DNA of 64,000 nucleotides. Source: Azolla caroliniana (lineage: Eukaryota; Plantae; Polypodiophyta). This document shows positions 10,741 to 55,900 of this stretch, piece by piece. The notes beneath the pieces are model-generated. The model saw only the letters and a list, made by a program, of their open reading frames with translations, did no database searches and was not told where the DNA came from. Position 1 is the stretch's first letter, and each line of letters opens with the position of its first letter. The DNA lies in assembly GCA_043228905.1 (NCBI GenBank), contig JBHGNT010000005.1:4836001-4900000 (forward strand), in the 5' to 3' direction. Position numbers and translations under genes: made by a program.

Positions 10741-12084
10741 AATTGGTTGAACCTCGATAAATTTTGGTAATGATTTCTCTCTCCTTCTTACTCTATCTAT
10801 CTAATATAGCTTTATTCTCTGTTATATATTGTTATTTTGACGCTTCCGCAATAATTCTAAATTGTTATATATTTCATTATTCGAAAAAGTACGCAAAGAT
10901 ACACAAATCATCGTAACTACCTCACAAAAATAATGAAATACATGAAATAAATATCGTGTTAAAATTTTTAAGCCAAAGGCCAAAGACGATATTTGTCAGT
11001 AATCGTAAATCATTCTTGCAAAGTAGGTATAATAAGCATTAAAGAAAGAATAATCAACATTCAACTTAGAGAATAATTAACTTGAAGAATATCGTTTTGA
11101 GAATATAAAGGATAATTTTTTAAGTGTGGTTCTACAAAAACATACAAAATTATATATATGATATGGAAAATAGTTTATTAGCATTTCATTTGAGTAATAA
11201 TAATTTTAAGTGGCCTTTCACATAAAAATGAAATTTAAACTCTTATGTGTCACTTTATAAACATTTTTGTTGGATGCATGTTTTCAACGGGCAAAATGAC
11301 CTTTGATACGCACGAAACCTGTCAAATTTTTGCGATGGCCTTACTTTCTCTGTCTATCCCAAGATGTAGGTAGTAGATTTTAGCTGTTGTTTTGATAGAG
11401 TCATCAAGACCCTCAAAATGAGTAGGCGGGCAGCGGATCATGGGTGGAGTCTTTGATGTGTCCTTTATTGTAAATTAAATTTAGGATTATTGGAAATCTT
11501 GTTCATTTGAACCTCATTGTTAATTCTCGTTATATATTGGTAATTATCATATACATACATGTCCTGTAATATGATAAGCTATATAGTATATGCAGTAAAT
11601 ACATAAATTATTTACGGGGAGGTGTTCATACTCATTACTAAATACAATGTATTTAAAGATCAATGTTTAACTAATATCTCCATAAAGACAGACAGAGTTA
11701 TGTAACTTGATTCTCACTGAAAAAATATGCTAAGAAGTTCAAACCAGTCCGCTTACGACCTGAGTGCCTGCCTGGTTTCCTCATTAGCTCAATTTACTTG
11801 CTGGGTCGAACGAACGAAGTACAACTCGCTTAGCTTTGTTACAACCTGCAACAATAGTTGGTGACATCACCACTCCCAATTATCACAATTCAATGTTTGG
11901 TGGGCCGTGGCCATCCAACAATGGATATACATACCGACACCTATAAAAACACCTCATAAGCAGATCAAGTATTGCATTTCCATTGACGAGAAAGAGAAAG
12001 AGAAACAGAAACAGAAACAGAAACAGGAGCTGTATTTCATTCCATTGCCAGGAGTTTGAATCTGGATTCAGAGAGCCGATACCA

Positions 12085-14097
12085 ATGTGTTCCTCATCCC
12101 AATACTCTTCTTCATCGGGAGGACAAAGAGCTCGTGTTGTGGTGGCCCTCGACTTTGGTACCACGTTCTCCGGCTTTGCGTACGCACGCACTGCTGAGCC
12201 TGACACTATTTACAAGTTCTATGATTGGCCATGTGTGGACAAGGTGGGTGCCAAGCCCTACTGCAAGACTCAGACGGCTCTCTATTATGAGCCCATCATC
12301 AAGCAAGAGCCACAATATGTTGGCCGTAGTCACGTTGCGCCCCCTGGCCCAGCTTTCAAGCTCAAGTCCTGGGGATGGCCTGCTCTTGTCGACTACACTG
12401 ACTCTGCTTGCTCCGCCTCGAAAGCATCCGGCGGTGGTCGCGCCAACTCCATTCGCTCTACTCCTCCCACAATTGCCTCTAGAATGAAAGGTCTACACGT
12501 GGTGGATTCTGAAGGATGGAGGCCATGGGAAGCCATGCTCAAGCCAAGTGGTTCAAACCACATTGGTGTAAACAGTACAGGTAAAGATATTGAACATTGC
12601 AAAGATTGGAGCTCGCGTTGTGGTTTTTTCGCGACGAAGTTCAAGCTCTACCTCGCCGATAACCCTCCCGGCCATCGGAACCTTACCCCTGCGGGCCTCT
12701 CTATGGAGGCCCTCATTGTTGACTACCTTCGAGGCATTTCAGGATTCATCCTCTCCGAGCTCCAACTCCGATATGGCAAGCATTTTGGTATGGATGATGT
12801 GCAATGGTGCCTCACGGTGCCGGCCATATGGGATGAGAAGGCGAAGCAGACCATGAAGGCCTGCGCTGAGAAGGCCGGGATGGTGAAGGGTCCTGGATGT
12901 GATGTGTCGGTCGCTGCCAGTCCCTTCCCTCTAGACATCATCCTTGAGCCTGAGGCCGCGTCCGTCTACTGCCAGGAGAAGGCCAAAGCAAGCCTCCGCC
13001 TGAGAAAGGGTGACAAGCTCCTAATTGCCGATGTGGGTGGGGGCACCATCGATCTCGTCCTCCACGAGAAAGCAGATGACGACCCCCAAAGCCTCAAGGT
13101 GCATGAAGTGGTGGGTAGCTACGGAGAGCTCGGAGGCGGGACGTTTGTGGATTCCCACTTCTTCAGTTTCCTGTCCGAGAAAATCGGATGCTTCAAGGAG
13201 TTCTGCAACAGCCATCCGGACATAGCCATGAGAATCTATGGATGGTGGCAGGACATCAAAACGGGTTTCGATGGTGAAGGCTACAGCGCAGATTTGCTTC
13301 TTCCTCGGAAGCTCAGTGAGGCGTGGGAGAAGTACGACAACGACAGTGGCGTTGGATCTGGGGGATGCAACACAGAAGATTACGATGAAGTGCGATTGGA
13401 AGACTCTGATTTCATGAAGATATTCGGACCGGAGGTGGAGAAGGTGCTGAGGCTAATCGAGAAGCAGGTAGGGGGAGTGAGGGTACTGATGGTGGTCGGT
13501 GGCTTTGCAGCTTCGCCATACCTGAGGAAGAGCATAAGAGACAAGTTCAGGGGAATGGTGGATGAGATCATGGTGCCGGAGGACCCAGGGAGTGCGATAT
13601 GCGATGGAGCCGTGCGCCTTCACATAGCAAGCGACATAATACAGTCGAGGATCGCGAAGAAGACGTACGGAATTGGGACACTTAGACGGGCGGTTGCAGG
13701 AGATCCAGCGGAGTTCTTGGGTGTAGACGATGATGGAGAATTGATATGCAATGACACGTTTGATGTTTATGTTAGGGAAGGGTCGAGAGTTCCTTTGGGT
13801 CACTCTGTGGAGCACACTTTTTCTCCTAGTTTTCATGGGCAGAGGAGTATAGGCATCGATTTGTATAGCTCTGTGAATCGTAATCCGAAGTTCACTAGGG
13901 GAGAGGAAGGAGTGGTGGAGGAAGGGAGTTTTCTGGTGGACATTTCAGAAGAGGCAACGGAGATGGACAAGAAGAGACGGGTCTTAGTGACCATGTGTTT
14001 TGGTGCATCTCTCATTGGAGTGAGTGCTTCGAGGGTGAATTTTGGGAGGTCCAGAGCTGCGGAGCATGGCCTCTCCGTAGTCTTCCAAGCTAGTTAA
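12085..14097 (+). CDS. HSPA12-like atypical Hsp70 family protein, copy 1 (intronless, about 670 aa)
   Basis: VVVALDFGTTFSGFAYA, WCLTVPAIWDEKAKQTM, LEPEAAS, DVGGGTIDL, VGGFAASPYL and SRIAKKTYG. The ATG at 12085 aligns with the ATG of copy 2. TATA-like CTATAAAA at 11941. Confidence 0.9.
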   Translation: MCSSSQYSSSSGGQRARVVVALDFGTTFSGFAYARTAEPDTIYKFYDWPCVDKVGAKPYCKTQTALYYEPIIKQEPQYVGRSHVAPPGPAFKLKSWGWPALVDYTDSACSASKASGGGRANSIRSTPPTIASRMKGLHVVDSEGWRPWEAMLKPSGSNHIGVNSTGKDIEHCKDWSSRCGFFATKFKLYLADNPPGHRNLTPAGLSMEALIVDYLRGISGFILSELQLRYGKHFGMDDVQWCLTVPAIWDEKAKQTMKACAEKAGMVKGPGCDVSVAASPFPLDIILEPEAASVYCQEKAKASLRLRKGDKLLIADVGGGTIDLVLHEKADDDPQSLKVHEVVGSYGELGGGTFVDSHFFSFLSEKIGCFKEFCNSHPDIAMRIYGWWQDIKTGFDGEGYSADLLLPRKLSEAWEKYDNDSGVGSGGCNTEDYDEVRLEDSDFMKIFGPEVEKVLRLIEKQVGGVRVLMVVGGFAASPYLRKSIRDKFRGMVDEIMVPEDPGSAICDGAVRLHIASDIIQSRIAKKTYGIGTLRRAVAGDPAEFLGVDDDGELICNDTFDVYVREGSRVPLGHSVEHTFSPSFHGQRSIGIDLYSSVNRNPKFTRGEEGVVEEGSFLVDISEEATEMDKKRRVLVTMCFGASLIGVSASRVNFGRSRAAEHGLSVVFQAS

Positions 14098-18799: not shown

Positions 18800-18820
18800 A
18801 TGTCTTCCTCATCACAATAC

Positions 18821-18855
<35 letters not shown>

Positions 18856-20728
18856 TGGGGGAGGGGGAGGAGCTCGCATTGTCGCGGCCCTTGACTTTGG
18901 CACCACGTTCTCGGGGTTTGCGTATGCGCGCACCGCCGAACCCGACAAGGTTTTCAAGCACTACGACTGGCCGTGCGTGGGCAAGGTGGGGGCCAAGCCC
19001 TACTGCAAGACGCAGACCAGCCTCTACTACGAGCCCATCATCGCCAAGCCTGAGACACAAGATGTCGGTCCTAATCAAGCTCAACAATCCCCAGCCTTCC
19101 AGCTCAAGTCCTGGGGATGGTCGGCTCTCGTCCATTACACTGAGTCGGCTCGCTCTGCTTCCAGATCATCACCTGCTGCTCACCATAACCCTAATCGACT
19201 GGCGCCTCCGGATTATGAAGGATGGAAGCCATGGGAAGTCAACGTTATGGACAACCCAAGCGGTTCCAACAACCTTGATGTGATCTGCACCGAACTACGG
19301 AGTGGCCCCAGCTCGCTTGTTGGCTTCTTCGCCACCAAGTTCAAGCTCTACCTCGCAGATCAGCCTCCATGCCATCGGAACCGTAGCCCTGCAGGCCTCT
19401 CTGTGGAGGTCCTCATAGCTGACTACCTTCGGTGCATTTCAGGATTCATACTCTCCGAGCTCCAACTCCGATACGGTAAGCATTTGGGTATGGATGATGT
19501 GCAATGGTGCCTCACGGTGCCGGCTATATGGGATGAGAAGGCGAAGCAGACCATGAAGGCCTGCGCTGAGAAGGCCGGGATGGTGAAGGGTCCTGGATGT
19601 GATGTGTCGGTCGCTGCCAGTCCCTACCCTCTGGACATCATCCTTGAGCCTGAGGCTGCATCCGTGTATTGCCAGGAGAAGGCCAAAGCCAGTCTCAACC
19701 TGCGAAAGGGTGACAAGCTCCTAATTGCCGATGTGGGTGGGGGCACCATTGATCTCGTCCTCCACGAGAAAGCAGATGACGACCCCGAAAGCCTCAAGGT
19801 GCATGAAGTGGTGGGGAGCTATGGAGAGCTGGGAGGTGGGACGTATGTGGATTCCCATTTCTTCAGCTTCCTGTCCGAGAAGATCGGATGCTTCAAGGAG
19901 TTCTGTAACAGCCATCCATCCATAGCCATGAGAATCTATGGATGGTGGCAGGACATCAAAGCTGGTTTCGATGGTGAAGGCTACAGCGCAGATTTGCTTC
20001 TTCCTCGGAAGCTCAGTGAGGCGTGGGAGAAGTACGACAACGACAGTGGCGCTGGATCTGGGGGATGCAACACAGAAGATTATGATGAAGTGCGATTGGA
20101 AGACTCTGATTTCATGAAGATATTCGGACCGGAGGTGGAGAAGGTGCTGAGGCTAATCGAAAAGCAGGTAGGGGGAGTGAGGGTACTGATGGTGGTCGGT
20201 GGCTTTGCAGCTTCGCCATACCTGAGGAAGAGCATAAGAGACAAGTTCAGGGGAATGGTGGATGAGATCATCGTGCCGGAGGACCCAGGGAGTGCAATAT
20301 GCGATGGAGCTGTGCGCCTTCACATAGCGAAGGACACAATACAGTCGAGGATCGCGAAGAAGACGTATGGAACTAGCATGCGTAGACGGGCGGTTGCAGG
20401 AGATCCAGCGGAGTTCTTGGGTGTAGACGATGATGGAGAATTGATATGCAATGACACGTTTGATGTTTATGTTAGAGAAGGGTCGAGAGTTCCTTTGGGT
20501 CACTCTGTGGAGCACACTTTTTCTCCTGTTGTTCATGGGCAAAGGGCGATGAGCGTAGACCTGTATAGCTCTGTGAATCCAAACCCTAAGTTCACGAGAG
20601 GAGAGGAAGGAGTGGTGGAGGAAGGGAGGTTTGTGGTGGACATTTCAGAAGAGGCAACGGAGATGGACAAGAAGAGGCGGGTCTCAGTGACCATGTGTTT
20701 TGGTGCGTCTCTCATTGGAGTGAGTTGA
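18800..20728 (+). CDS. HSPA12-like Hsp70 family protein, copy 2 (642 aa, C-terminally truncated)
   Basis: Same motifs as copy 1 and nearly identical over the central region. Poly-Ser from (TCA)n. A TGAGT duplication at 20721-20730 creates the stop codon. Confidence 0.88.
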
Positions 20729-28070: not shown

Positions 28071-30836
28071 ATGGTAAAACAATAGCACAATTCACTTGAT
28101 TAATGATATACATATCCTTGTGCAACTTCTGATTCCCTGATGTCCTTGTGCGTTCGCTTATTTCCAGGTGAAGTTTACTATTGAAGAGCTTCGTAGGATC
28201 ATGGACAAAAAGAATAACATTCGCAATATGTCTGTTATTGCTCATGTGGATCACGGTGTGACCATTATTCAACACTTCTAGTGTTATTTATGATAATAAT
28301 TCATACCAATTTTGCTGGATTCCGCACTATTCTTTTGTATTGGTTTATATAATAGTTAAAAGAGAACCAACTGTATCTCGTTATATTTGTTGTAGGTAAG
28401 TCTACGTTGACAGATTCCCTTGTGGCGGCTGCTGGAATTATTGCTCAGGAGGTTGCGGGTGATGTGCGTCTAACTGACACACGTCAAGATGAAGCTGAAC
28501 GTGGCATCACCATCAAGTCCACTGGAATCTCCCTCTATTATGAGATGACTGAAGCTTCATTGAAGGATTACAAGGGTGAGAAAGATGGCAATGATTACCT
28601 GATCAACTTGATAGACTCTCCTGGACATGTTGATTTCTCGTCAGAAGTCACTGCAGCTCTACGTATCACAGATGGTGCCTTGGTCGTGGTGGATTGTGTT
28701 GAAGGTGTATGTGTGCAGACTGAAACTGTCCTTCGTCAAGCTTTAGGTGAGAGGATTCGTCCTGTGCTTACTGTTAACAAAATGGACAGGTGCTTCCTTG
28801 AGCTCCAAGTGGAGGGAGAGGAGGCATACCAAACCTTCCAGAGAGTCATTGAAAATGCGAATGTTATTATGGCAACATATGAAGATCCACTCCTTGGTGA
28901 TGTCCAAGTTTATCCTGAAAAAGGAACTGTTGCATTTTCTGCTGGTCTACATGGATGGGCTTTCACCCTTACCAATTTTGCCAAAATGTATGCTGCTAAA
29001 TTTGGAGTTGATGAATCGAAGATGATGGAGAGGTTGTGGGGTGAGAATTATTTTGATCCTGCCACTAAAAAGTGGACGACAAAAAATACTGGGGCTCCTA
29101 CATGTCAGAGAGGTTTTGTGCAATTTATCTACAACCCTATTAAGCAGATAATCAATATCTGTATGAATGATCAAAAGGACAAACTGTGGCCCATGCTTGC
29201 AAAGCTTGGCGTCACAATGAAGGGTGATGAGAAAGAACTCAGGGCAAAGGCTTTGATGAAGCGTGTGATGCAGACGTGGCTTCCTGCTAGTGATGCTCTT
29301 CTTGAAATGATGGTGTTCCACCTTCCGTCTCCCGCTAAGGCACAAAGGTACAGAGTTGAGAACCTGTACGAGGGCCCTCTTGATGATCAGTATGCTAATG
29401 CTATCAGGAATTGTGATCCTGATGGTCCCCTCATGCTTTATGTTTCTAAAATGATTCCAGCATCAGATAAGGGTCGATTTTTTGCTTTTGGACGTGTGTT
29501 TTCAGGGAAGGTTGCCACTGGGTGTAAGGTGCGAATCATGGGTCCTAACTATGTCCCTGGCCAAAAGAAAGATTTGTACACAAAGAGTGTTCAGAGAACT
29601 GTTATATGGATGGGGAGGAGGCAAGAATCTGTTGAGGATGTGCCATGTGGAAACACTGTGGCCATGGTTGGTCTTGATCAATACATAACAAAGAATGCAA
29701 CCCTCACAAATGAGAAGGAGGTCGATGCTCATCCTATCAGGGCAATGAAGTTTTCTGTCTCACCTGTTGTGCGTGTTGCAGTTCAATGCAAGGTTGCCTC
29801 TGATCTTCCTAAGCTAGTCGAGGGCTTAAAACGCTTGGCTAAATCAGATCCTATGGTTGTATGTACGATCGAAGAGTCTGGAGAGCACATCATTGCGGGT
29901 GCTGGTGAGCTTCATCTGGAGATTTGCTTGAAAGACTTGCAAGAGGATTTCATGGGTGGTGCTGAAATCATAGTTTCTGATCCTGTTGTCTCCTTCAGGG
30001 AGACTGTGCTTGAAAAATCTCATCACACTGTCATGAGCAAATCTCCTAACAAGCACAACCGGCTGTACTTTGAGGCCAGACCTTTGGAGGATGGGCTTGC
30101 TGAAGCTATTGATGATGGACGTATTGGTCCCAGAGATGATCCTAAAGTTCGGAGCAAGATCTTGTCTGAGGAGTTTGGTTGGGATAAGGATCTTGCAAAG
30201 AAAATTTGGTGTTTTGGGCCTGAGACGACTGGACCTAATCTTGTGGTTGACATGTGTAAGGGAGTTCAGTATCTCAATGAAATCAAGGATTCGGTTGTAG
30301 CTGCTTGCCAGTGGGCTACCAAGGAGGGTGCCCTCGCTGAAGAAAACATGAGAGGAATTGCTTTTGAAGTTTGTGATGTGGTTCTTCATGCTGATGCTAT
30401 TCATAGAGGAGGAGGTCAGGTTATTCCCACTGCAAGACGTGTGATGTATGCTGCTCAGCTAACTGCTAAACCAAGGTTGTTAGAACCTGTCTATCTTGTG
30501 GAGATTCAAGCACCTGAACAAGCTCTTGGTGGTATCTACGGTGTGTTGAATCAGAAGAGAGGGCATGTGTTTGAAGAAATTCAGCGTCCAGGGACTCCAC
30601 TCTATAACATCAAGGCTTATCTTCCTGTGATAGAGTCTTTTGGGTTTTCGAGCACTCTCCGTGCAGCTACATCAGGACAAGCGTTTCCTCAGTGTGTCTT
30701 TGATCATTGGGATATGATGAATAGTGACCCATTTGAGTCTGGATCACAGGCTGCCCAGCTTATTGTGGATATCCGCAAAAGGAAGGGATTGAAGGAACAA
30801 ATGACCCCGCTCTCTGAGTATGAAGATAAGCTCTAG
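28071..30836 (+). CDS. eEF2: Eukaryotic translation elongation factor 2 (843 aa; coding exons 28071-28073, 28168-28255, 28396-30836)
   Basis: Spliced start [39 protein letters not shown] with GT-AG introns in compatible phase. [19 protein letters not shown] and the diphthamide loop [11 protein letters not shown] are present. Confidence 0.98.
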
Positions 30837-33022
30837 AAATCTTCTGGATGGGAAAGTAACTTGGCAGAGTTTGCATTTTGGTTGTAGTATTTCTTTTTCG
30901 AGGGGTAAAGTAAGGTTATAGGAGGTAAGAGAACATGACTCATAAATCTTGCAGCTCACTTTACGGTTATGCCTTCTGGCAGGGATCATGAGGTGAACTG
31001 TTTTTTCTAATATTTTTGTTGAGTTTTTAGGTTTTCATTGATGCGTTTGCTGGAATTTCGAACTAATTTGTATTATGAAGATCTTGTTTTTGCAAGAGTT
31101 TTGTATGTGGAATCGTGGAATCATGTTTTTGCAGAAGATTAAATGGTATTTACTTAATTATCGTGTGTTTAAAAGTTTCAGGTTTGTCTTTTTGAACTGT
31201 AACTGCATTGTATTTTTAGGTGTTGACATATTTTTCTATGGAAAGTTCAATTAACTTGATCTTTATGGTGTCGTTTTAAATATTGTACTATGAAAATGGT
31301 TTATGCAGAAGTTCTGTGTTAAACGTATTATTTCAGAGTATTATGTAGATATAATTTTTAGGCGGTTTTCACTAAACCGGAACATCCTTATACTTGATTT
31401 GTTCCATCAAAGAAAGGACCTTCCGGCTGACAGTAGAAATATATATGTAGACTTGATGATTATTATGTTCCCTTTCCTATGCTCAAATTAGAAGAATTGT
31501 CTATCTTCGAGGCTCCAGCGTAGGCATTACGTGAAGAACTTGTCTCCTCTGACCTTCTCAAATGAAAGAGGAGTTATTACATCATGAGGTTTTGCAAATT
31601 AACTAAATATCATGTTGCTCTGTTAACTAGTGTATGCAGAAACGGCACTATCATTTTCTGACGTTTCATAATGTCACAGAGAATCATTTCAGTTCATATG
31701 TTTGTTATCGTACACAGCTCTTGAATCTGAAGTTGACACTATCAACTACATTTGGTAGTGATTATACATGTTTGCTAATTGACTTGTGGTTGCATTTGTT
31801 GGTTGTGTTAGAGAGTGATATCCTTCTTAATGAGATGAGTTTCTTGGTGCCATACAATGATTTACTTTAGGGTTGAGTTGCTTTATGATTCCTACACAGT
31901 GGCTAATATAACTTTAGATTGAAGATCAAATCCTCAGTATGAGGGTTCCTATCCCACAAAGTGGTCCCATAAGAGCTCCACCTCATTGTAATAAGGCATG
32001 TAAGATTTCAAGGAGTTAAGAGGAGCTTATTCTTGTTCTTCGAAATTGACATTATCCCCTCACAAATGATAATTGGACAAAAAGATAGTTTTCGTCATGT
32101 CAAAAAGATAGCGAGTTCTTTTGGTGTTGACATCTTATTTTGCTTAGTAGTTGACATCCCCACTTATTCCTATGTCTCGCTAAGTTTGAAACATTTGATA
32201 AGATCTGGTAAAGAGAGCCACAAAAAGGAATATGAAGTAGCGAAGATATTTTTTTGTTGGTTTATGTAGGGGAATGGTTTATTGGAGATTTGCATTAGAT
32301 AATATCTTTGAAAGAGAGCAACAAAAAGAAACAAGAAGACGAGAACATATTTCTTTGCTATAGTGATTACTTTGTCAAATCACATCAAAAGCACGCAAAA
32401 TTTATTTTCGAAACCGACCTCACCTATTATTGCGAAAACAAAAGGCATAAGAAGATAAGAACATATTTCTTTGTTATAGTGATTATTTTGTTCAAAACAC
32501 ACCAAAAGCACACAAAATTTATTTTCGATGCCGACAAAGCTCACCTAAAAATCAATCTATTATTGCCTTGTGATGCTTTGTTGTAGATATTGTCTTTTTT
32601 CTATTTATTTAAAAGGCATCTATTCATTACATTAGGTCCCTTGGTTGACAAGACAACTTTTTTTGTAAGCAAGTAATAGTCTCACGAAATGAGGAGAGAC
32701 ATACATTTCCTATGCACGGAGACATGGAAACGTTTAGCTATAAACAAAGTCGAAGGTTGTGCAACTGGCGCGTGGCGATTATGAAGTTTGTATGTAACCG
32801 AGGGGCCTGTAAGAAAGAGCTAAGAGTGAGGTGAATCAATGTATGTGTTGTGTGGGGCAAAATGCATGTGAAGGACAATCTCTCTGTCTCTCTGTCTCTG
32901 TCTCTTATCGTAATTTCCCGACAGCTGTAAGTTGTTAGATTACTAACACACTATGTCTTGGGTTGGAAACAAAATTTTCTCACCTCTTTATTACTCCATA
33001 GTACATACATCTCTCTCTCTCT

Positions 33023-33058
<36 letters not shown>

Positions 33059-33806
33059 TAAAAACACTGAAAGAAGAAGAAGGAAAGAAAGAGCACAATT
33101 AAAAACACTGTTAAAGAAGAAGAAGGAAAGGGCCAAAAATGGAGGAGGGACAAATAAAAAGTGTGTGGAGAGGAAATGAGGGACAACTGCAATTGAGGAT
33201 AAGTATGCCTGCCTGCCTGCCTCCCCTGCTTCATCCCTTCCTGCTCTGCATCCTCCTCCTCCTCCTCCTCCTCACACTCAAGATTTGATTCAGACAAATT
33301 TTCGGGCTTGCCAAAGTAGATGAAGGTTCTAGGTTTCCAGACAGCTTCCCACCCTCCTCTCATGATAGCAGAGAAATTTAGGGTTTTCTGAGCCCCTGAA
33401 GTGAAGTGGCAACACAAACCTATGGTTTTTAAACACACGACGAAGCAGAGGCGCTGTTAAAGAAGGTCGAGAGCTTCCGGCGCCGCGAAAATAAGGAGCT
33501 GATGAAAAGCAAGAGTTTCGGACACCAGGGAACAGAGAATCTAGCGCTTCAGACACCAGGGAAACAAAAAATGTGAAGCGGTTAGAGTTTCAGACGCCGC
33601 GATTTGGAAGGGGTGAAGAAATTTAGAGTTTCATAGAAGAGGGTAAGAAATGAATGTTTTTGCTTCAGTCTCGGTGCAATAGTAGGGTTTCAAACTCGAT
33701 GAAAGAGGAGATTCAATGCTGAAAAGTTAGGTTCTCAGACATAATGAAATAGAAGATTAGATCATAAAGATGTTAGATTTTCAGACATGATGAAACAAAA
33801 GATCGG

Positions 33807-34475
33807 ATGATACCACTAGTGAATGTGATGGAACAAGAAGATATAGCCATGAGCGTTTCTCATCCCCATAAAGATAATGGAATTAGAAATGGTGGAGTTA
33901 TAGCAGAGTACAAGATTGAAGAGAGTACGAGTAGCAACAATAGTAATAGCAACAATAATTACAGCCATAACAACTACTACGACAACAGTAACAGCAACAA
34001 TAATTACAGCTATAACAACTACGTCAGTGGTAGTATGTGTCCTTATCTGGGTTGTCAACAAAGAGTTAAACCTGCTAAACCTGGTCATGAGACAGCTTGC
34101 AGTCCTCTCCATCATCTGCTTGTTATGTGTAAAAGGTTTTGTACTAAGAACCCGAGCTTCGATACCAGTCTCAAGTGTTTCTATTCGATAGGAGATATTC
34201 ACACAACTCCTCATTGTGCATTTGATACATGCCCTCAAACCCCATGTTATAAAGGGAAATGGTGCTCTGAACAGCACTTCTTGTATTGGCTACAATTCTT
34301 TACCAGGAATTTAGACCCTGTTCAGAGGTGTAAATTCCAGGGCTGTCCTCGGCATGTGTTTGTTGAGGTAAAGAGCGACGGAGTTTCACTTCAAGTCCAT
34401 GATTTCTGTTGTTGGACTCATTGCCAATACCAATATATGCGCCCGAACTCTTTGCCGCTTAGACCAAATAATGAG
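33807..34475 (+). CDS. Exon encoding an Asn-rich tract and three C-x4-C-xn-C-x3-H putative zinc fingers
   Basis: CPYLGC...CSPLH, CAFDTC...CSEQH and CKFQGC...HDFCCWTH. Donor GAG|GTATGC at 34476. Confidence 0.6.
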
Positions 34476-35005
34476 GTATGCATTACTTTTAACTAATTTC
34501 TTTTGTGTGATAACGTCAATATTACCTTATTTTATAGAACCACAATATGAGATAGAGAGGGTTTTTTAAAGCTAGAAAGAGACAGTTTGTTTGAGATTTC
34601 CTCCAAACTTCATAGGTAACTTAGCTGAAGGGAAATCTGTTTATATGTGCACATATAAAGGACATTATATATAGTGCTCCTTGTTTGGGACAGGTACATG
34701 TTAAGCTCCTTGTTTTGAACTACTAACACAGGAAATATTGTTTATATTGCTTAAAATTAGGATTAGCTCTAAAACACTAAAGTCATTAAATATCCTTATC
34801 ACACATGCCAAGTTTTTTGAAGAGAGTGGTTGGTTTAGAGTTCTTGTGAAAGGGAATTGGTAGAGGAGAAGTTAGCTGGCTAGAATTCTCTAGGGGAAAA
34901 TGGGCACCTTTTTTATTCATCTAAATGTGAAGCGCAATCATCTAAATGAGCACTTTTTTCTACTCATTTTTTCCTGCGTTTAGTTTCTTATCTAGTGTAG
35001 TTAAG

Positions 35006-35666
35006 ATGCAGAGCGGCTACTGTGTGGAACTCACACCTAATGCGGCTATAGAGTCCTTGAAGGAATATGTGCGCAATAAATCTTCTCAACCAAAGGGCGT
35101 GCTAGTCGATGAATGCTTTTTCAACAAACATCCAGAGGATGTTCTAAATGAACCTGGTAATTCTTTGGAAAATCTCTTGGTTAGTAAAATATTGTTTCAT
35201 TGATTTAAACGTCTGTCATGTGCTAGGGTATCAATCTTGTTGGATAATTGTAAAGTGCAATTGGAATAAGGGTCAAAGAATGCTGAGGACAAAAGATGGA
35301 TATCACTGGAAACAACATGGCAAGCCTTGTAAGTCCTTTATCAGTGATAGTGAAGTGACTCGAAAACATTTGAGCTATACCAAGTTGGGAGGAAAGAAAA
35401 GAAACTTGGATGATTCTGTTGAATCGAAAAATTTCCATATGGTTGAGTATACTTTAAGTGATGTGGAATTTAAAGATTATTGTGTAGTGAAGCTTCAAAA
35501 AGGGAACTCCTCTAAACAAGGGAGCAAGAGAAAGCGTATCCCAAGCCGTCGATGTATGCCAAGGTTAGGTCGTAATGATTCGAATCGAATGGTGGAGAGT
35601 AATTTGACTGTCCTTGACGATTCATCTTGGTGGGATGCTTACTTTCCCATTAGTCCCAACATTTGA
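35006..35666 (+). CDS. Highly divergent NAC-domain protein exons (about 35006-35156 and 35227-35666)
   Basis: Subdomain-like blocks appear in NAC order: A GYCVELTPNAAIESLKEYV, B FFNKHPEDVL, C WII...RTKDGYHWKQHGK, D TRKHLSY...NFHMVEYTL, E DYCVVKLQK. A 70-nt phase-1 GT-AG intron lies right after subdomain B, as in canonical NAC genes. Basic NLS-like SKRKR follows. Confidence 0.65.
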
Positions 35667-37523: not shown

Positions 37524-40500
37524 CTAAACATTACATCTTTTCCAAATTTCTTTTCGTTTTAGCTTCAAATTTTCATCTCTGAACACTTCAATCTCATATA
37601 GTTTGGGCCAATCTTTTCCAGTAACTGCCAGCAGAAGTCATAAGACACTCGATAAATTATAAGCAGGCAATTACTGGACAGTACAAATTTATTTATGAGA
37701 GCAAATAAACAAAAAGCGCACCGAAAATTCGGTCCTTCTCTGGATCCCAAGCTATACCATTCAATACATCAATGAACTATAAAAGCAAAAAGACAAAGAC
37801 CACGTCAGTTTAAATCTGAAAAAAGAAACTAAAAAAATAAGAGGAAACTCAAAAACCCATGTATGTTTATATCTGAAAAAAATTAACTCATTATCTTCAG
37901 AAGCTCCTACTTTTCCTTTTGCTATACAGAGAAATCCTTACATTGTTGCCTTCAGCAAGAAGATTGCTCCTGTCATTGATACAAATTTAATTACTCAATT
38001 TACTACATTAAAACAAAGATAATTATATGCAAAAACAAAATGCAATGAATTGTCTGTGTTTCTGTACCATTTGAAAAAACCAAACATAAATAAAAACATG
38101 TATATCGCTTTTCTAATGGATTTAAAAGATTACAAGTGCTACCAAACTTGTGCATATGTAAGTGTTTAACCTGAGTCCATGAAGAAGAATCCAACCAAGT
38201 ACCCTTCCGTTTTTAGGGGAGATCCTAACAATACAATCCGTCTGCCAAAAAAAAAATGAAAGGTCAAAAGACACATTTACGTGGAAATTTTGTCAAATTT
38301 CTACGCAATAGTTTTCAATAGAACCAATAGATATATTACCATCCACACATTGGCCCATAGTTCATCATGAACATATTCTAGCTCATTAAGCTGAAAGATT
38401 TCTTTGGTCTCATCCTTCACTACATATTTTCTTTCCTCTGCATAGCATAAACACAGATATTTACAACACATTATGATTGTATTTCCAATGCTCATGTTAT
38501 CTCTTGTAATTAGAGGAGTATACAATATTAAGCTCCCAGTTTATCTTGAGATTGATTGAGACAATGAGTATACACCATATGATGATTATTGAATCAGCAT
38601 AATGGTCTCGTTCACATTATGGAAAATATTACATATCGCAAATTCCTTTCCCTGTCTACCTTCTCCCGTCTTAAAACAATTAACAAATTATAGTTACTAG
38701 TGATTATATGACAATGTGCAAACACGAGTATACAATATTAAGCTCCCAGTTTATCTTGAGATTGATTGAGACAATGAGTATACACCATATGATGATTATT
38801 GAATCAGCATAATGGTCTCGTTCACATTATGGAAAATATTACATATCGCAAATTCCTTTCCCTGTCTACCTTTTCCCGTCTTAAAACAATTAACAAATTA
38901 TAGTTACTAGTGATTATATGACAATGTGCAAACCTTTGAAAGTAGATGGTTCCATCACATATATAGTTGAACTGCCATCACTCCCATATAGGACTTTACC
39001 ATCAGTAGCCAATCCCCATCCATCTTTCATTGGATGTTGGAATTTCCCTGACTATGAAAAATGATATGAAAGCATGATCGTTACCAAAAATTGAGGATTT
39101 ATTACCGAGTTTCCATGTTTTTATAAGTTTTTCTATTATAGGAAAGATAGAGGTACCCACTTACCAAAGAAAGAGTGCTCTCATCATAAATGAACCCATA
39201 TGTGATCTTCCAAGCCACTTGAAGTAATCTAGCAAAACAAAGTAAGTTCATGTTAAAATAAACTGAATATGCAAAGATAATTAAGACTAAAGACAGTTAA
39301 GAAGATCAGTTAAGTCTGACCTGTGATTGAAAAGGGTAAGTCCTTCACCAAAATATTGGCTGCTCATTTTGTTCTCTATTAAAACCTGCAATTTCACTTT
39401 TTCTTTTTTAATCAACGAAAGAAGGATGCTCTTCCAATATTCTGAGGTTTTCAAAACAAAGATATAACACTTTTCCACCTCTTATCCATCATAATCAAAG
39501 TAGGTATGCATATGAGATCCGAGAGATTAAACAGGGATAGCCTATCCAAGGTTTTCAAAATAGATTATAATATAGGTGCTAGAGACGTAAAGTAGGTATA
39601 GACATGAAATCAAGAGACACAACATCAGCTCTCTTTTGGCTGTTTAGCATTTCTATGGTAGAAACTTGAAAGAGCTTCAAAAAAACTGGACAAATGGGTG
39701 GTTATAATTTATAAGATATTAAAGTATATCAAGCACGTACCTTACTGTATATAGGTTCTCACATCCTTATATAATGCAACAGGGATTATTTTTCATGCTA
39801 CAGTAAGTATAATTATTATAAGATCTTGATAGCAACATATTCGTTAGATGAAACTCTAATCAATTAATAGACAACCACTTAATCTGAGAATAATCAAGTT
39901 ATACAATAATCCATCCTTTGATTGTTGGATGTTCTTATATTGGAGTCAGAGAACTACAATGCACTATGAAGCAGAACCAGGGAAGGGGAAGCATAACGTA
40001 AGGAAACACCGCTTCTTGCCATTGCGATAGGCGACCTGCAGCATACAGTTTTGTACTAGGAAAAAAAGTACTATATATTATAATCTGCAATTTGGCAGCA
40101 TGGACACCCATTTTAGAACATGGTTCTTCCATCCTCTTCCATATGGAGGAATATGGATTACTTGGGTAAAGCCGACAAATTAAAGGCAGCAACTTGAGAG
40201 AAAACGTGAAGGAGGATTTGTTGTTTGCATTCCGATAATCTCTTCCCTTACATAATTCCTACAAATTCAACTATTCTGTTGATTTTATTTTCTACGTGAT
40301 TCATGGGTTTGTTTAGTTGAGTGATGTTCGAAACCTTACATGTGGTGGAGACATCCAACAGTGAGTAAACCCTGGTGGTGTTAAGAGTCTACTGCCCGAT
40401 ATATAAGCCCAAGTTACATGGAAAGAAACTATTATTTGGGTGCAGAATAAAATCATCAATTCATACTTCATTAAATCATCTCAAAGTAGAGAATCTAGAT

Positions 40501-44575: not shown

Positions 44576-45754
44576 CTAAGCTTCTTTCTCATACTTAAGA
44601 GGCTTAACAACCTCCCAAGTGAAATCAGGGTCATTACGACCAAAATGCCCATAGGCAGCAGTCTTCTGATACCTCTTATTCCCACCTCGTCGAAGATCGA
44701 GATCAATGGCAATCATACCAGGGCGGAAATCAAAGTTTTTCTTTACAATCTTCAAGATCTCAGAATCAGGAATGCTACCAGTGCCATAGGTATCCACAAA
44801 CACCGATAAAGGTTCAGGAACACCGATTGCGTAAGAGACTTGTACAAGGCATCGGCGAGCAAGATGAGAAGCCACAACACTCTTAGCAGCTTGCCTCACA
44901 ATATAAGCACCACTTCGATCAACTTTTGTGGGATCTTTACCAGAGAAAGCACCACCACCATGAGCACCCCATCCACCATATGTGTCGATGATTATCTTTC
45001 TTCCGGTTAGACCAGCGTCTCCATGAGGGCCACCAATCACGAATCGGCCAGATGGGTTTAAGTGGAAAATGGTCTTCTCATCCAAATACTTTTCAGGAAT
45101 AACTGGCTTAATCACATGCTCGCGCAAATCAGAAACAATTTGATCATTTGTGACTGTTTCATCATGTTGAGTTGAGATAAGTACAGTATGAACTCTGAGC
45201 GGAACCATAGCACCTCCTTCATTTTTGTATTCCACAGTAACCTGAGTTTTTCCATCAGGTCGAAGCCATGGACATGTTCCATTCTTCCTAACCTCAGTTA
45301 GTTTTGACCCTAGTTTTGTAGCCAAGACATGGCTCAATGGCATCAACTCCTCTGTTTCATCTGTAGCATATCCAAACATATGTCCTTGATCACCTGCACC
45401 AATCTCTTCTGGCTTTTTTGTGAAGTGGCCATGAACAACTTGTGCAATATCAGGACTCTGTTGTTCAATGTTCACCAATATTTTGCAGTTATCAGCATCC
45501 AAACCAACTTCTTCAGATACAAAGCCAATCTCTCTACACGTGTCTCGCACAATCTTTTCATAATCAACCTTTGCTTTAGTTGTGATCTCACCAAATATCA
45601 TCACCATATTCGTCTTAGTACAAGTTTCACATGCTACCTTGCTCTCAGGGTCTTGTTCCAAACAAGCATCAAGAATTGCATCTGAGACTTGGTCACAGAG
45701 TTTATCAGGGTGTCCTTCATTCACAGACTCGGAGGTAAAGAGGAATGTATCCAT
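44576..45754 (-). CDS. SAMS: S-adenosylmethionine synthetase (methionine adenosyltransferase), intronless CDS, 392 aa
   Basis: [42 protein letters not shown] and AAYGHFGR. A 5'-UTR intron acceptor lies at 45770-45769. Confidence 0.98.
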
Positions 45755-52975: not shown

Positions 52976-55900
52976 ATGTCTACCTCCGCTTCCCCTCCAA
53001 GCTCTCGTCCTTCGAAGAGCTCCAAGCGGAATTCTGGCTCTTCTTCTTCTTCTTCTTCTTCTTCGAGGCGCGAGCTTTCTTTCCGTGGTTATCAGAGCAA
53101 CGCTTCTGGTAAGTTGTCTTCTTCCTGTAGTACATATTGTTTTCCTCCGAATTCTGTACGAATTGTAATGTTTGTCTCCGGACTTTGTCCATATCGTGTT
53201 CTTTTGTTTGTTCTTGAATTCTGTACGAACTGCTTAATTCCTGAATTCGGCTTCATATTCCTGAATTCTCTATGAATGGCTTCATTCGGGAGGTGTCTTC
53301 TTGTTTGAATTGTCAATTCATTATTTTCGAAAGCATATGAAATCTTTAGTTTACGTCCATTACTTTCTTGTTCTTGGATTCTTTACATTCTCGTTAGTTT
53401 TTAAAATAAATCTGTCCGAATGCTTTCTCTACTTTGTATTCAATTTCATTTCATTTCCGTTCGAATTTCGTGGATATATCTCTTATTTCGTAAATTTCCA
53501 TTGTTTCGTAAAGTTCTATGTTTAATTATGGTTTATTTACTTCTGATTTCTATGTGGATTTGTTTCGTTTTCAGATCGCAATTCTATGGATATTCTTGAA
53601 TTATGTATCATTTGCTTTCTTTCTCTTCACATGTCACTGACTGGTTTTTTCTTTTCAGAAAACTGTCTTACTATCTTCATTATTATCCTTTCATATTCAC
53701 CAGGAAGTTGTTGACTTCTTGCTTAACGGTGTCATTTAATGGTTTCTTTCTTCTCATTTGTCTTCTAAATTTCTCTGTTTAATTCAGGCCATTCTAAAGA
53801 CCCATCTATCCGCGAGAAAATCAGCGATCACAAAGAAAACTCTTCAAACATCACCACGGTGAGCGGACGACCTAGTCTGAATCTCAAGACACCTCCAAAG
53901 AAACCATGGGCACACCACTTTTCTAAAGTCTCCACGACAAGTTCACCAAACCCAAGAATCCTAGGGGAAAGGAACAGGTCGTGTTCTCCATTGAGGTCCG
54001 GATCACCAAAGGTAAGCACAGATCTTACTCCAAGGGATGAGCAGAAAAAACCACAGTCCACTGTAGATCAGCAAGAAAACTTCACACCGAAGGGGAAAAG
54101 TGTCACAGAGCTCTCGAAACGAATTCAGAAATTCCTTGTGGATCAAGAAACACTTTTGGGAGTCACAGATCCTGCAAAAAACGATATAGAAATCATAGGT
54201 GTAGCGGATGGGGAGAGAATCCAGGCTTCTCTTTCATCCCCCTATGATCCTTACTGTTCACCTTTTGCTGAGCGTCCTCAGTTCCTGCGTCTCCATGGGA
54301 CAGTATCTTCAATGGAGACCCCAGAAGTGCCGCATAACACTGTGATGATTTCTGAGTTGGGAGGAGAAATTGCACACAATATTCATGTGATATTAAATCC
54401 ACTAGTTCCACATGCAGAGGCTGAAAGACAACAGTCAGATTGTATCGAAGAAATTGAAGAAGGAGAGATTGTGGGAGTGAATTTTAGCGAGTCGCCACAG
54501 CCAGAGGAAGCAAATGTTCTGCTTGCTGGTGATGATGGTGAAGATGAAAGTATGAAAGGTTCACACCACTTCATCGAAGAAGAACATTCGACTGAGTCAC
54601 TCAAAGAGAATTCATTTGTTCAGGGAGGAGATTTAGGAATTTCCCCATTAATGCAAACTGAAGAACTGTCTGATAAGGATGAAAACCAGAAACATGAGGA
54701 AGAAGCAGCACCACTCCAAGACGATGAAGGAGCCAATGAAGCTCAGGAAACTTTAAAAGAGAAGCTTGAACATTCAATTATATGTGAACTCAGAACGAAT
54801 AAATCTCAGATGGAAGATGTTGAAGGAGTTTCTTCTGTGGAATATGATGATATTTCAGATGCAGAACTGTGCAAGGAAAGAAGCTATACCAGAGATATCT
54901 TGTCTGGTGTTCTACTTCTTTTCTTTATGGCATCAGTTCTCATGGCCTCTGGTAGCCCTGGACTTCTTCCATCATCTCTGAGGAATAACTACATTTCAAC
55001 TGGTTGGCATGGAAGCAGATTCCATCAACCTTTATCAGTATTTCTTCAGAACTTTGAAGCTCTTTGGAGTGAAGAGCAGATATCTCTCTCTGTGGATGCA
55101 CGCATGGCCATAGAAGATGCCAAAAATATCTACAGAAACATGAAAAACTTAACTGATTGGAAAGAACAGATCTATATCCGTGCTATTGAAGGTGGGAAAG
55201 ATGTATACAGGCTCATGAAAACCTGGACTGATCAAGCCATTAGTGAACTTCACCTCCAATTTGAATTAACGTCCCACGTTATGGTCGAATGGTGGCGGAA
55301 AGCCAAGGATTCTGAATTTCCTGAAGGTAGAGCTCAACAATTTGAGTGGATGAAAGAGTATGATTTCAGCAATGAGGAATGGATGAATGAAGAAGAAGCA
55401 AATGCAGAGATTGTACTGAATGACTGGGAATTACTTCACGAGTTTGATTTACAGGAAGCAAACAAACTCTTTCGAGGGTCTGTATCCGATAGCGTATGGA
55501 ATGATCTTCAAAAGAATGTCACTCGCTTGAGTGATATGTCTGCAGTGAAAGGTGTTTTGGAGGGTTTAATGAAGCTGAAAGGAGGGAGAACTGAGGAGGA
55601 TAGGATGGAAGTTTTACAATATTTCTGGGAGTATGCAAGGTTGGCTTCTCATGTTGAAGAAGAATATCTTTCATTACACACAGGAGATCATGAAATTATC
55701 AAGGAATCCCTTTATGAAACAGATTCTCATGTTGACGAAGAATATCTTTCAATACACACAGTAGATCTTTCATTACACACCGGAGATCATGAAATTATCA
55801 AGGAATCCCTTTATGAAACAGATGAAATAGATATTATTGTTGAAGTGGCTCCTGAGGTATCTCAGAGTTCAGAAACAGAATCTGAGTTCTCTGGTAATGC

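What the first reader, a model, noticed from the sequence alone, without database searches (positions are those of the whole stretch)
33807..35666. Novel architecture: triple CCCH-type zinc fingers joined to a highly divergent C-terminal NAC domain
The first exon encodes an Asn/Tyr low-complexity tract and three C-x4-C-x(9-21)-C-x3-H repeats. The third (CKFQGCPRHVFVE...VHDFCCWTH) recalls Cys/His repeats I associate with fungal and protist ADP-ribosyltransferase-linked proteins. About 530 bp downstream lie exons with all five NAC subdomains in order and the canonical phase-1 intron after subdomain B, but strongly diverged (GYHWKQHGK for GYWKATGK). The phase-0 donor at 34476 can join phase-0 acceptors at 35005 or 35011 to give one ORF of about 420 aa. 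Typical NACs have the domain at the N-terminus and no such fingers, so this may be an undescribed lineage-specific transcription factor class. Caveat: a nearer acceptor at 34537 would introduce a stop, so the fusion is unproven.
Basis: partly seen in the sequence, partly recalled or inferred. Interest (0 to 1): 0.8.

Follow-up and report, generated by a model that had tools for sequence, protein, structure and literature searches.

The report
Fern zinc-finger plus NAC-fold regulator gene
This water-fern locus is most likely one three-exon gene of a small, unstudied fern family whose proteins join two or three zinc-binding modules to a very diverged NAC-type DNA-binding domain. The layout resembles the known plant VOZ regulators, so it is not wholly new.

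Summary
Exon 1 (33807-34475) encodes three C-x4-C-x(10-20)-C-x3-H modules. Exons 2 (35006-35156) and 3 (35227-35666) encode a NAC-like domain, and the phase-0 join is in frame.

The fusion is the rule in a fern family:
- Annotated "hypothetical" genes of Ceratopteris and Adiantum carry fingers and the NAC-like part in one protein.
- So do eight contiguous ORFs on contigs assembled from public sequencing runs.
- All of them map collinearly onto the three window exons.

Pfam NAM never reaches its cut-off (none for the window exons; 26.2-26.5 bits against 27 in relatives). However, an AlphaFold model of the family's domain (pLDDT 87) matches only NAC crystal structures strongly (Z 11.4-14.6; next unrelated 5.4).

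The fingers are not classical tandem CCCH fingers and match no family significantly.

Against a 91%-identical sister copy, omega is 0.33-0.39, both ORFs are intact and all indels are in frame.

Two limits remain. The claim that NAC proteins never carry such fingers overlooks VOZ factors, which have one CCCH-ligand finger before a C-terminal NAC-like domain. Homology to VOZ could not be tested.

Verdict: a real, uncharacterised fern transcription-factor family, and a new variant of a known kind.

The parts
33807..34475 (+). Exon 1 (223 codons). It holds an N-terminal extension with an Asn/Tyr-rich tract, three zinc modules and a linker, and ends on a complete codon before the GT at 34476.
   Evidence: The ORF is. 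Fern fusion proteins align to 34023-34484 by tblastn with E 1e-29 to 4e-5. The finger domain is 27-43% identical to distant fern relatives. The sister copy L001 keeps the ORF, and all four indels are in frame.
33930..34022 (+). Asn/Tyr/Ser low-complexity tract, a 15/45-nt repeat. Its length differs between the two copies by a 14-residue indel.
34038..34112 (+). Zinc module 1: C-x4-C-x14-C-x3-H, followed by a predicted helix.
   Evidence: Coordinates are. The ligands are kept in all relatives that have this module.
34215..34277 (+). Zinc module 2: C-x4-C-x10-C-x3-H.
   Evidence: C64, C69, C80 and H84 of alignment A6 are invariant in 10 of 10 sequences. It has a weak resemblance to the Spp1 C3H finger.
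34329..34421 (+). Zinc module 3: C-x4-C-x20-C-x3-H.
   Evidence: C102, C107, C128 and H132 of A6 are invariant in 10 of 10 sequences.
34476..35005 (+). Intron 1, phase 0, donor GTATGC. The acceptor AG is at 35004-35005, or at 35010-35011 (TGCAG), which would shorten the product by two residues. An alternative 62-nt intron (34476-34537) would end the protein after five more codons.
   Evidence: Sequence is. The intron position matches the one revealed by the Ceratopteris intron-retention isoform P0029 compared with P0030. The intron is 93.4% identical to the sister copy. It was not verified with reads.
35006..35156 (+). Exon 2, the NAC-like N-terminal part. It holds a helix equivalent to subdomain A and the FF-x-K-H-P motif equivalent to subdomain B, and ends one base into a Gly codon.
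   Evidence: tblastn matches the fern proteins at 51-56% identity. Only 2 of 50 residues differ from the sister copy, with dN 0.017 and dS 0.18.
35157..35226 (+). Intron 2, phase 1, 70 nt, GT..AG.
   Evidence: Sequence is. The same position is marked by the 26-residue retained-intron insert of Ceratopteris isoform P0028 compared with P0010.
35227..35666 (+). Exon 3. It holds the NAC-like beta-sheet core (GYHWKQHGK at 35298-35324, FHMVEYT at 35433-35453, DYCVVKL at 35475-35495). A basic KRKR stretch follows (35526-35537), then a short tail with an acidic/aromatic motif (35613-35645) and the stop at 35664-35666.
   Evidence: phmmer gives E 3.5e-15 to 7e-4 to 12 more distant fern relatives, besides the sister copy (P0003, 5.2e-51). 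Protein-language features point to NAM clusters, with a top score of 0.94 and 29 of 30 hits. Homology with the sister copy ends near 35578. dN/dS is 0.28.

Best explanation
The locus is a single three-exon gene of about 417-419 codons. It belongs to a family seen here only in leptosporangiate ferns: the window's genome (Azolla according to an earlier scan note, not verified here), Ceratopteris, Adiantum and several unnamed transcriptomes.

The protein has, in order:
- two or three N-terminal zinc modules of the form C-x4-C-x(n)-C-x3-H, each followed by a helix
- a short linker
- a strongly diverged NAC-fold domain
- a basic stretch (a likely nuclear localisation signal) and a short acidic/aromatic tail

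Shown:
- The architecture and its conservation.
- The NAC fold of the family's domain, modelled on the relative P0006, which is 39% identical to window exon 3.
- Coding constraint on all three window exons.

Inferred:
- It acts as a nuclear, sequence-specific transcription factor.
- The NAC-type sheet contacts DNA. Its R..T..GYHWKQxGK strand corresponds to the DNA-contacting WKATGxDK strand of NAC and to WRKYGQK of WRKY.
- The zinc modules support DNA binding or partner binding. In VOZ2, mutating the Cys and His of the C-x3-H pair abolishes DNA binding.
- A finger-only product, from intron-1 retention or the 62-nt alternative intron, may exist as a second isoform, as annotated in Ceratopteris.
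For: Fusion in relatives:
- P0008, P0009, P0015, P0021 and P0030 are single proteins with fingers plus the NAC-like part.
- The contigs behind the apparently 'NAC-only' hits carry the fingers upstream in the same open frame (L008, L009, L015, L016).
- L009-L012, from four runs, have nearly the same ends, as expected of an mRNA.

This locus:
- Each full-length relative maps collinearly to exons 1, 2 and 3, and there is only one copy in the window.
- Both intron positions coincide with those exposed by the Ceratopteris retained-intron isoforms.

NAC fold:
- The AF2 model has pLDDT 87 and pTM 0.82.
- The top 12 Foldseek hits are all NAC domains, with E 4e-7 to 7e-5, and the next hit is E>0.03.
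- VIA-align gives Z 14.6, rmsd 2.5 A over 129 residues, to ORE1. Other NAC domains score 11.4-12.7, the next unrelated chain 5.4 and WRKY 4.3-4.8.
- The Atlas fold hit is a NAC cluster with TM 0.78.
- Pfam NAM is just under its cut-off, over almost the whole profile, in P0006 and P0030.

Constraint:
- omega is 0.33-0.39 by four methods, and no bootstrap replicate reached 1.
- Substitutions by codon position are 27, 20 and 41.
- All four exon-1 indels are in frame.

VOZ analogy: PMC4081100, PMC3625871, PMC7139294.
Against:
- No transcript-derived fused protein from this genus appeared in the protein searches.
- A good-looking 62-nt alternative intron would truncate the protein after the fingers.
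- The window copy and its sister depart from two family-conserved positions. The Trp of H-P-W is Glu, and the first Tyr of Y-x-T-Y is His.
- First and second codon positions diverge about as fast as intron 1, 6.4% against 6.6%.
- The C-terminal tail beyond about 35578 is not shared with the sister copy.
- No sequence profile reaches significance against NAC.
- DNA binding and zinc binding are untested.
- The fold model is of a relative, not of the window's own joined product.
Confidence: 0.75

Rival explanations
1. [quoted passage not shown] On this reading the third finger plus the NAC-like domain corresponds to VOZ domain B. This concerns classification and is compatible with the main explanation.
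For: - VOZ has one zinc finger made of three Cys and one His, directly N-terminal to a C-terminal NAC-like domain (PMC7139294, PMC10548236, PMC4081100).
- Its essential ligands C249 and H253 are spaced C-x3-H, like each module here (PMC3625871).
- VOZ introns have phases 0, 0 and 1 (PMC6204039). The window gene's two introns are phase 0 and phase 1, in that order.
Against: - No VOZ-length protein appeared among the 19 hits of the exhaustive HMMER search with exon 3.
- The fern proteins start directly with finger 1, so they leave no room for VOZ domain A.
- No VOZ sequence could be obtained with the tools, so no alignment was made.
- The positions of the VOZ introns relative to its domains were not checked.
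Confidence: 0.35
2. At this locus the two parts are not joined. On this reading there is a finger-only gene ending shortly after 34475, by intron retention or the 62-nt intron. A separate NAC-like gene then starts at ATG 34946 or 35006.
For: - The alternative acceptor at 34537 and the retained-intron stop are both conserved in the sister copy.
- An in-frame ATG lies at 35006 and another at 34946.
- Ceratopteris has an annotated finger-only isoform, P0029.
Against: - All eight relatives whose contigs could be read are fusions, and so are the annotated full-length proteins of the fern genes. The apparent NAC-only proteins were truncations made by the gene caller.
- The exons are collinear with the fused proteins, and the linker length fits.
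- A strong TGCAG acceptor lies at 35011, and the frame is kept.
Confidence: 0.1
3. The window copy is a silent or decaying duplicate of the family, an unexpressed pseudogene in the making.
For: - Two family-conserved residues are replaced.
- The C-terminal tail is unrelated between the two copies.
- Non-synonymous divergence is about equal to intron-1 divergence.
- No transcript-derived protein of this genus appeared in the databases.
Against: - Both copies keep intact ORFs in all three exons and both splice-site pairs.
- omega is 0.33-0.39, with a bootstrap upper bound of 0.52.
- The indels are in frame.
- The two replacements are shared by both copies, so they are old and tolerated.
Confidence: 0.12
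4. The C-terminal domain is a zinc-less WRKY-type domain, not a NAC domain.
For: - Family profiles hit only WRKY1 and WRKY18 among PDB sequences (E 0.046-1.1), on the GYHWKQQGK strand.
- Pfam WRKY matches P0021 with E 0.01.
Against: - These hits cover about 40 residues only and are not significant.
- The whole 140-residue domain superposes on NAC with Z 11.4-14.6, but on WRKY with Z 4.3-4.8 over 70 residues.
- The N-terminal helix and the H-P-W element have NAC counterparts but no WRKY counterparts.
- No WRKY zinc ligands are present.
Confidence: 0.03

Closest known systems
[quoted passage not shown]
   Same: - A zinc finger with three Cys and one His lies directly N-terminal to a diverged, C-terminally placed NAC-like domain.
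- The last two ligands are spaced C-x3-H.
- The intron phases are compatible (0 then 1).
- In VOZ2 the finger is needed for DNA binding (PMC3625871, PMC4081100, PMC7139294, PMC6204039).
   Different: - This family has two or three fingers instead of one.
- There is no room for VOZ domain A.
- The proteins are much shorter (about 340-450 residues, and they start at the first finger).
- The family was seen only in ferns.
- No detectable sequence match to VOZ-length proteins appeared in the exhaustive search.
- Homology was not tested directly.
NAC (NAM/ATAF/CUC) domain, Pfam PF02365; structures ANAC019, ORE1, SNAC1
   Same: - The whole-domain fold matches (Z 11.4-14.6).
- The order of elements is the same: helix, then H-P-W, then the R..T..GY-WK..GK strand, then the EY strand, then the final strand.
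- An intron follows the subdomain-B equivalent.
   Different: - The domain is C-terminal, not N-terminal.
- The G-F-R-F-H-P-T-D-E-E-L start, which forms the NAC dimer interface, is replaced by a plain helix.
- An extra His sits in GYHWK.
- Pfam scores stay below the gathering cut-off in every member.
- The second canonical NAC intron is absent.
WRKY DNA-binding domain
   Same: The DGY-x-W-[RK]-x-x-G-x-[KP] strand is similar enough for marginal profile hits, and the beta-sheet core is shared (Z 4.3-4.8).
   Different: There are no C2H2 or C2HC zinc ligands inside the domain. An additional N-terminal helix and strands give the NAC topology.
Rtr1/RPAP2-type and Spp1/CFP1-type C3H zinc modules
   Same: The ligand pattern C-x4-C-x(n)-C-x3-H is the same. 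Weak hits were found: RPAP2_Rtr1 E 0.0018-0.0042, Spp1 profile E 0.47 and Foldseek E 3.2.
   Different: All hits are far below the thresholds (17.8 bits against a cut-off of 33). The surrounding protein context is unrelated.
Tandem CCCH (C-x7-8-C-x5-C-x3-H) RNA-binding zinc fingers, Pfam zf-CCCH
   Same: Only the ligand composition, three Cys and one His.
   Different: The spacing is different and there is no profile hit.

Membership tests
NAC (Pfam NAM, PF02365) | Profile match at or above the curated gathering score (27 bits) | tested here: not met
   The window exons give no hit at E<=10. The best relatives score 26.2 bits (P0006) and 26.5 bits (P0030), and 3 of 17 members match at E<=1. 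The window exons were scanned separately and were not joined.
NAC (Pfam NAM, PF02365) | NAC fold: a twisted antiparallel sheet packed by an N-terminal helix | tested here: met
   The AF2 model of the family domain (P0006:1-140, pLDDT 87) matches NAC crystal structures. Foldseek gives E 4e-7 and TM 0.60-0.71. VIA-align gives Z 14.6 and rmsd 2.5 A over 129 residues. The model is a proxy, not the window's own joined product.
NAC (Pfam NAM, PF02365) | Five conserved subdomains A-E in order | tested here: inconclusive
   Counterparts of B (FF-x-K-H-P), C (GYHWKQxGK), D (x-M-x-E-Y) and E (D-Y-C-x-V-K-L) are present in order. The subdomain A signature is absent and is replaced by a helix.
NAC (Pfam NAM, PF02365) | Domain at the N-terminus, followed by a disordered regulatory region | tested here: not met
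   The domain follows 100-220 residues of zinc modules. A short basic/acidic tail follows it.
NAC (Pfam NAM, PF02365) | Sequence-specific DNA binding as a dimer | not testable with these tools
   This needs EMSA, DAP-seq or PBM.
VOZ | A CCCH-ligand zinc finger immediately N-terminal to a NAC-like basic domain (domain B) | tested here: inconclusive
   The architecture is analogous: finger 3 lies 25-40 residues before the NAC-like domain. There are 2-3 fingers here, and no VOZ sequence was available for alignment.
VOZ | Conserved N-terminal domain A | tested here: inconclusive
   The relatives begin 5-8 residues before finger 1, which leaves no space for it. The window gene has a 77-residue low-complexity extension instead. 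Domain A itself was not available for comparison.
VOZ | Sequence homology to VOZ domain B | not tested
   No VOZ sequence could be fetched with the tools. The exhaustive HMMER search with exon 3 returned no VOZ-length plant protein.
VOZ | Three introns with phases 0, 0 and 1 | tested here: inconclusive
   The window gene has two introns, phase 0 then phase 1. This is compatible with the last two VOZ introns (PMC6204039), but their positions were not compared.
Tandem CCCH zinc finger (zf-CCCH) | C-x7-8-C-x5-C-x3-H spacing and a Pfam match | tested here: not met
   The spacing here is C-x4-C-x10-20-C-x3-H, and there is no Pfam hit.
Rtr1/RPAP2 zinc finger (PF04181) | Profile match above the cut-off (33 bits) | tested here: not met
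   The best scored hit is 17.9 bits (E 0.0039); the lowest E-value was 0.0018. It matched 3 of 10 finger domains, and not the window's.
WRKY | WRKYGQK strand plus a C2H2/C2HC zinc site, and a Pfam match | tested here: not met
   Pfam WRKY reaches 16.5 bits against 21 in one member. There are no zinc ligands in the domain. The fold Z is 4.3-4.8, against 11.4-14.6 for NAC.

The most novel reading that the evidence does not exclude
The fern family, perhaps together with VOZ, is a surviving early branch of the NAC lineage. It still pairs the NAC-fold sheet with zinc modules and still carries a WRKY-like GY-x-WK-x-x-GK strand. If so, it would be a living intermediate for the proposed descent of NAC domains from WRKY/GCM1-type zinc-finger DNA binders. 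It would also show that a zinc-assisted NAC fold is an ancestral state, not a one-off in VOZ.
Probability: 0.12. Interest if true: 0.8.

Novelty: new variant of a known kind. Interest (0 to 1): 0.55.

Why it matters
NAC factors are one of the largest plant-specific regulator families, and their origin and atypical forms are poorly understood.

This family falls outside the curated NAM profile, so genome-wide NAC or VOZ surveys will miss it. It nevertheless has a confident NAC fold joined to a repeated zinc module.

It offers three things:
- a second, independent or related, example beside VOZ of a zinc-finger-assisted NAC fold
- a test case for what the zinc module adds to DNA recognition
- a candidate set of fern-specific regulators, including three genes in Ceratopteris, which is regarded as a transformable model fern (from general knowledge, not checked here)

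For annotation, it shows that the "hypothetical proteins" KP509_37G035000, KP509_37G035300, KP509_18G042900 and L7F22_000847 are probable transcription factors.

Tried and rejected
- **Joined product.** All searches used single exons by reference, or whole relatives.
- **Single-sequence searches of the window exons.** Pfam and PDB sequence searches found nothing.
- **Word-based protein searches.** They returned only near-identical genomic contigs. With the family profile they returned one new member.
- **Profiles against PDB sequences.** They gave only marginal WRKY and Spp1 hits.
- **Finger domain fold.** The AF2 model was poor (pLDDT 55.6), and both fold searches with it were empty.
- **Atlas feature search for the fingers.** No usable hit.
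- **Metagenome scan.** The single-protein scan returned only the same species and the sister copy.
- **False positives.** Five giant Ig-repeat proteins in the HMMER list (P0011, P0012, P0016, P0019, P0020) come from summed weak repeat hits; the two scanned (P0011, P0012) are immunoglobulin-repeat proteins.
- **Transposon cargo.** I considered this and found no terminal repeats around the gene. The only hint is a faint CxC6 (KDZ-associated) hit.
- **VOZ sequence or motif spacing.** I could not obtain either from papers or supplements.
Full report
**What is in the sequence**

The window is plant DNA, and earlier notes of this scan call the genome a water fern, Azolla. On the + strand, an ORF from ATG 33807 runs to a GT donor at 34476, directly after a complete codon.

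Exon 1 encodes:
- a 77-residue N-terminal extension with an Asn/Tyr/Ser tract (33930-34022), a 15/45-nt repeat
- three units of the form C-x4-C-x(n)-C-x3-H at 34038-34112 (n=14), 34215-34277 (n=10) and 34329-34421 (n=20)

About 530 nt downstream lie two more exons. Exon 2 is 35006-35156 and ends one base into a codon before a GT. Exon 3 is 35227-35666 and follows an AG. The acceptors ending at 35005 and 35011 both continue the frame of exon 1. The AGs in between lead into stops. A 62-nt alternative intron (34476-34537) would end the protein five codons later.

**Searches with the window's own exons**

- Pfam finds no NAM, no zf-CCCH and nothing else in any exon at E<=10.
- phmmer against PDB sequences finds nothing.
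- Word-based protein searches find only genomic contigs from metagenome assemblies. One is identical to the window (L005). The others form a sister copy (L001-L004), about 91% identical in exon 1 and collinear through exon 1, intron 1, exon 2, intron 2 and exon 3. Homology with the sister copy ends near 35578.
- Protein-language features of exon 3 point to NAM clusters. The top score is 0.94, and 29 of 30 hits carry NAM. The finger region gave no usable hit.

**The decisive search**

An exhaustive phmmer search of exon 3 against 1.84 billion representative proteins gave 19 hits at E<=0.001.
- Five are giant repeat proteins that matched through summed weak repeat hits; the two I scanned (P0011, P0012) are immunoglobulin-repeat proteins. 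I treat all five as false positives.
- One is the sister copy (P0003).
- The other thirteen are plant proteins of 144-385 residues.

The named ones are "hypothetical proteins" of the ferns Ceratopteris richardii (KP509_37G035000, KP509_37G035300, KP509_18G042900) and Adiantum nelumboides (L7F22_000847). The rest come from contigs assembled from public sequencing runs.

P0008, P0009, P0015, P0018/P0030 and P0021 carry two or three of the same Cys/His modules at the N-terminus and the exon-2/3-like part at the C-terminus of one protein.

Four hits looked NAC-only (P0004, P0005, P0006, P0017). For these I read the contigs. In every case the frame is open upstream and encodes the fingers, so the gene caller had simply started at an internal or non-ATG codon (L008, L009, L015, L016).

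The contigs L009-L012, from four runs of one series, have almost the same ends, as expected of a transcript. Ceratopteris and Adiantum genes span only 230-310 nt more than their coding length, so they have short introns. The contiguous ORFs on 1.2-2.1 kb contigs are therefore most simply spliced mRNAs. I could not check the library type of the runs.

**The window locus fits this architecture**

- By tblastn, each full-length fern protein maps in order onto exon 1, exon 2 and exon 3. For example, the L008 ORF maps residues 5-151, 176-221 and 220-349. There is no second copy in the window.
- The unaligned linker is of similar length on both sides, 16-18 against 24 residues, so no exon is missing.
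- The Ceratopteris isoforms with retained introns mark the family's intron positions. P0029 diverges from P0030 just after the finger domain. P0028 carries a 26-residue insert right after the H-P-W-E-V motif, compared with P0010. These are the positions of window introns 1 and 2.

**Is the window copy under constraint?**

I compared it with the sister copy over 366 aligned codons.
- omega is 0.33-0.39 by NG86, LWL85, YN00 and ML. The bootstrap interval is 0.21-0.52, and no replicate reached 1.
- By exon, omega is 0.43, about 0.1 and 0.28.
- Substitutions by codon position are 27, 20 and 41.
- All four exon-1 indels are multiples of three.

Four cautions apply:
- Intron 1 is unusually conserved (JC 0.069). 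First and second codon positions diverge about as fast as it does. The upstream region diverges at 0.156.
- Two family-conserved residues are replaced in both copies: the Trp of H-P-W and the first Tyr of Y-x-T-Y.
- The last 28 residues are not shared with the sister copy.
- No transcript-derived protein of this genus turned up.

**What the C-terminal domain is**

Sequence profiles do not settle it.
- Pfam NAM reaches 26.2 and 26.5 bits (cut-off 27) over nearly the full profile in P0006 and P0030. It matches only 3 of 17 members at E<=1.
- Family profiles against PDB sequences hit only WRKY1 and WRKY18, marginally (E 0.046-1.1), on the GYHWKQQGK strand.

Structure settles it.
- The AlphaFold model of the family domain used alignment A4 with first row P0006:1-140, which is 39% identical to window exon 3. 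It has pLDDT 87 and pTM 0.82.
- Its twelve best Foldseek matches are all NAC-domain crystal structures (ORE1, ANAC019, SNAC1), with E 4e-7 to 7e-5 and TM 0.60-0.71. The next match is above E 0.03.
- VIA-align gives Z 14.6 (rmsd 2.5 A, 129 residues) to ORE1 and 11.4-12.7 to the other NAC entries. The best unrelated chain scores 5.4 and WRKY domains score 4.3-4.8.
- The Atlas fold search returns a NAC cluster with TM 0.78.

The domain is therefore a NAC fold that lies outside the curated sequence family. The usual G-F-R-F-H-P-T-D-E-E-L start is replaced by a plain helix, and the strand reads GYHWKQxGK, one residue longer than NAC's GYWKATGK and closer to WRKY's motif. That this strand contacts DNA follows from published NAC and WRKY structures, not from a test here.

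**What the fingers are**

In an alignment of ten finger domains from distinct ferns, the four ligands of module 2 and of module 3 are invariant. Those of module 1 are kept wherever the module exists. P0008 has only two modules. The consensus shows a repeated design: C-x-L-P-G-C, a variable loop, [WF]-C-x3-H, then a helix.

- No Pfam family is matched significantly. The best hits are CxC6 (E 8e-4), RPAP2_Rtr1 (E 0.0018; the best scored hit is 17.9 bits against a cut-off of 33) and Zf_WRKY19 (E 0.022).
- The profile and the poor AF2 model (pLDDT 55.6) both touch the small C3H finger of yeast Spp1, at non-significant levels.
- A wide structural search was empty.
- They are not classical tandem CCCH fingers.

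**Comparison with what is known**

- VOZ1/VOZ2 have a zinc finger N-terminal to a NAC domain (PMC4081100).
- The finger consists of three Cys and one His (PMC7139294, PMC10548236).
- Mutating C249 and H253, a C-x3-H pair, abolishes DNA binding (PMC3625871).
- VOZ genes have three introns of phases 0, 0 and 1 (PMC6204039), which is compatible with the 0-then-1 pattern here.
- Reviews also mention atypical NACs with the domain near the C-terminus (PMC10651149).

The fern family differs from VOZ in several ways. It has two or three fingers, it has no room for VOZ domain A, and its proteins are shorter. No detectable similarity to VOZ-length proteins appeared in the exhaustive search. I could not obtain a VOZ sequence with the tools, so homology to VOZ remains an open and plausible possibility.

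No paper mentions the Ceratopteris or Adiantum genes, or a fern zinc-finger NAC family, in the library I could search.

**Verdict**

The finding is real and the fusion idea is right at the level of the family. At this locus the fusion is very likely but unproven by RNA.

It is an uncharacterised family, seen here only in ferns, of probable transcription factors with a NAC fold and repeated C-x4-C-x(n)-C-x3-H zinc modules. I rate it a new variant of a known kind (VOZ-like/NAC). It is of moderate interest to people who work on plant transcription-factor evolution.

Noticed in passing
window 33504-33800 (also L001 about 480-760): Just upstream of the start codon lies a run of degenerate units of about 30 nt. 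They share a core like GTTTCAGACA followed by ATGAAA-type ends, at 33504, 33535 and 33721, with further copies visible by eye. The run is conserved in the sister copy. It could be a cis-regulatory array or a 5' UTR with several upstream ATGs.
   Followed up: partly
window 34476-35005: Intron 1 is 93.4% identical to the sister copy. Exon 1 is 91.3% identical and the upstream region is 86%. Intron 1 is therefore more conserved than synonymous sites (JC 0.069 against dS 0.17-0.19). This is unexplained. It could reflect a regulatory element, gene conversion or local mutation-rate variation.
   Followed up: partly
window 28407-30836 (+), 44576-45754 (-): There are two long uninterrupted ORFs for housekeeping proteins. 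One is elongation factor 2/G-like, with all domains but starting at profile position 19 of the GTPase domain. The other is a complete S-adenosylmethionine synthetase. The absence of introns may be normal for this fern, or the genes may be retrogenes.
   Followed up: partly
window 11983-14097, 18800-20728, 53859-56831 (+): Three ORFs of 642-990 codons have no Pfam hit at E<=0.001. The first two lie in the region another note calls HSPA12-type Hsp70 genes.
   Followed up: no
window 3750-5027 (-): A reverse transcriptase plus RNase H ORF of an LTR retrotransposon.
   Followed up: no
window 38516-38933: Two adjacent, 100% identical 208-nt direct repeats, spaced 210 nt start to start.
   Followed up: no
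window 33010-33056, 33206-33273: There are (TC)8 and (CA)15 microsatellites, and TGCC and TCC repeats, upstream of the gene. The sister copy lacks the long dinucleotide run at the start of contig L001.
   Followed up: no
L002 and L005 (ENA ERZ27227284 and ERZ27227313): The same metagenome series holds both the window-identical copy and the 91% copy. The two may therefore be different species in one sample set, or paralogues or homeologues in one genome. I could not tell which.
   Followed up: no
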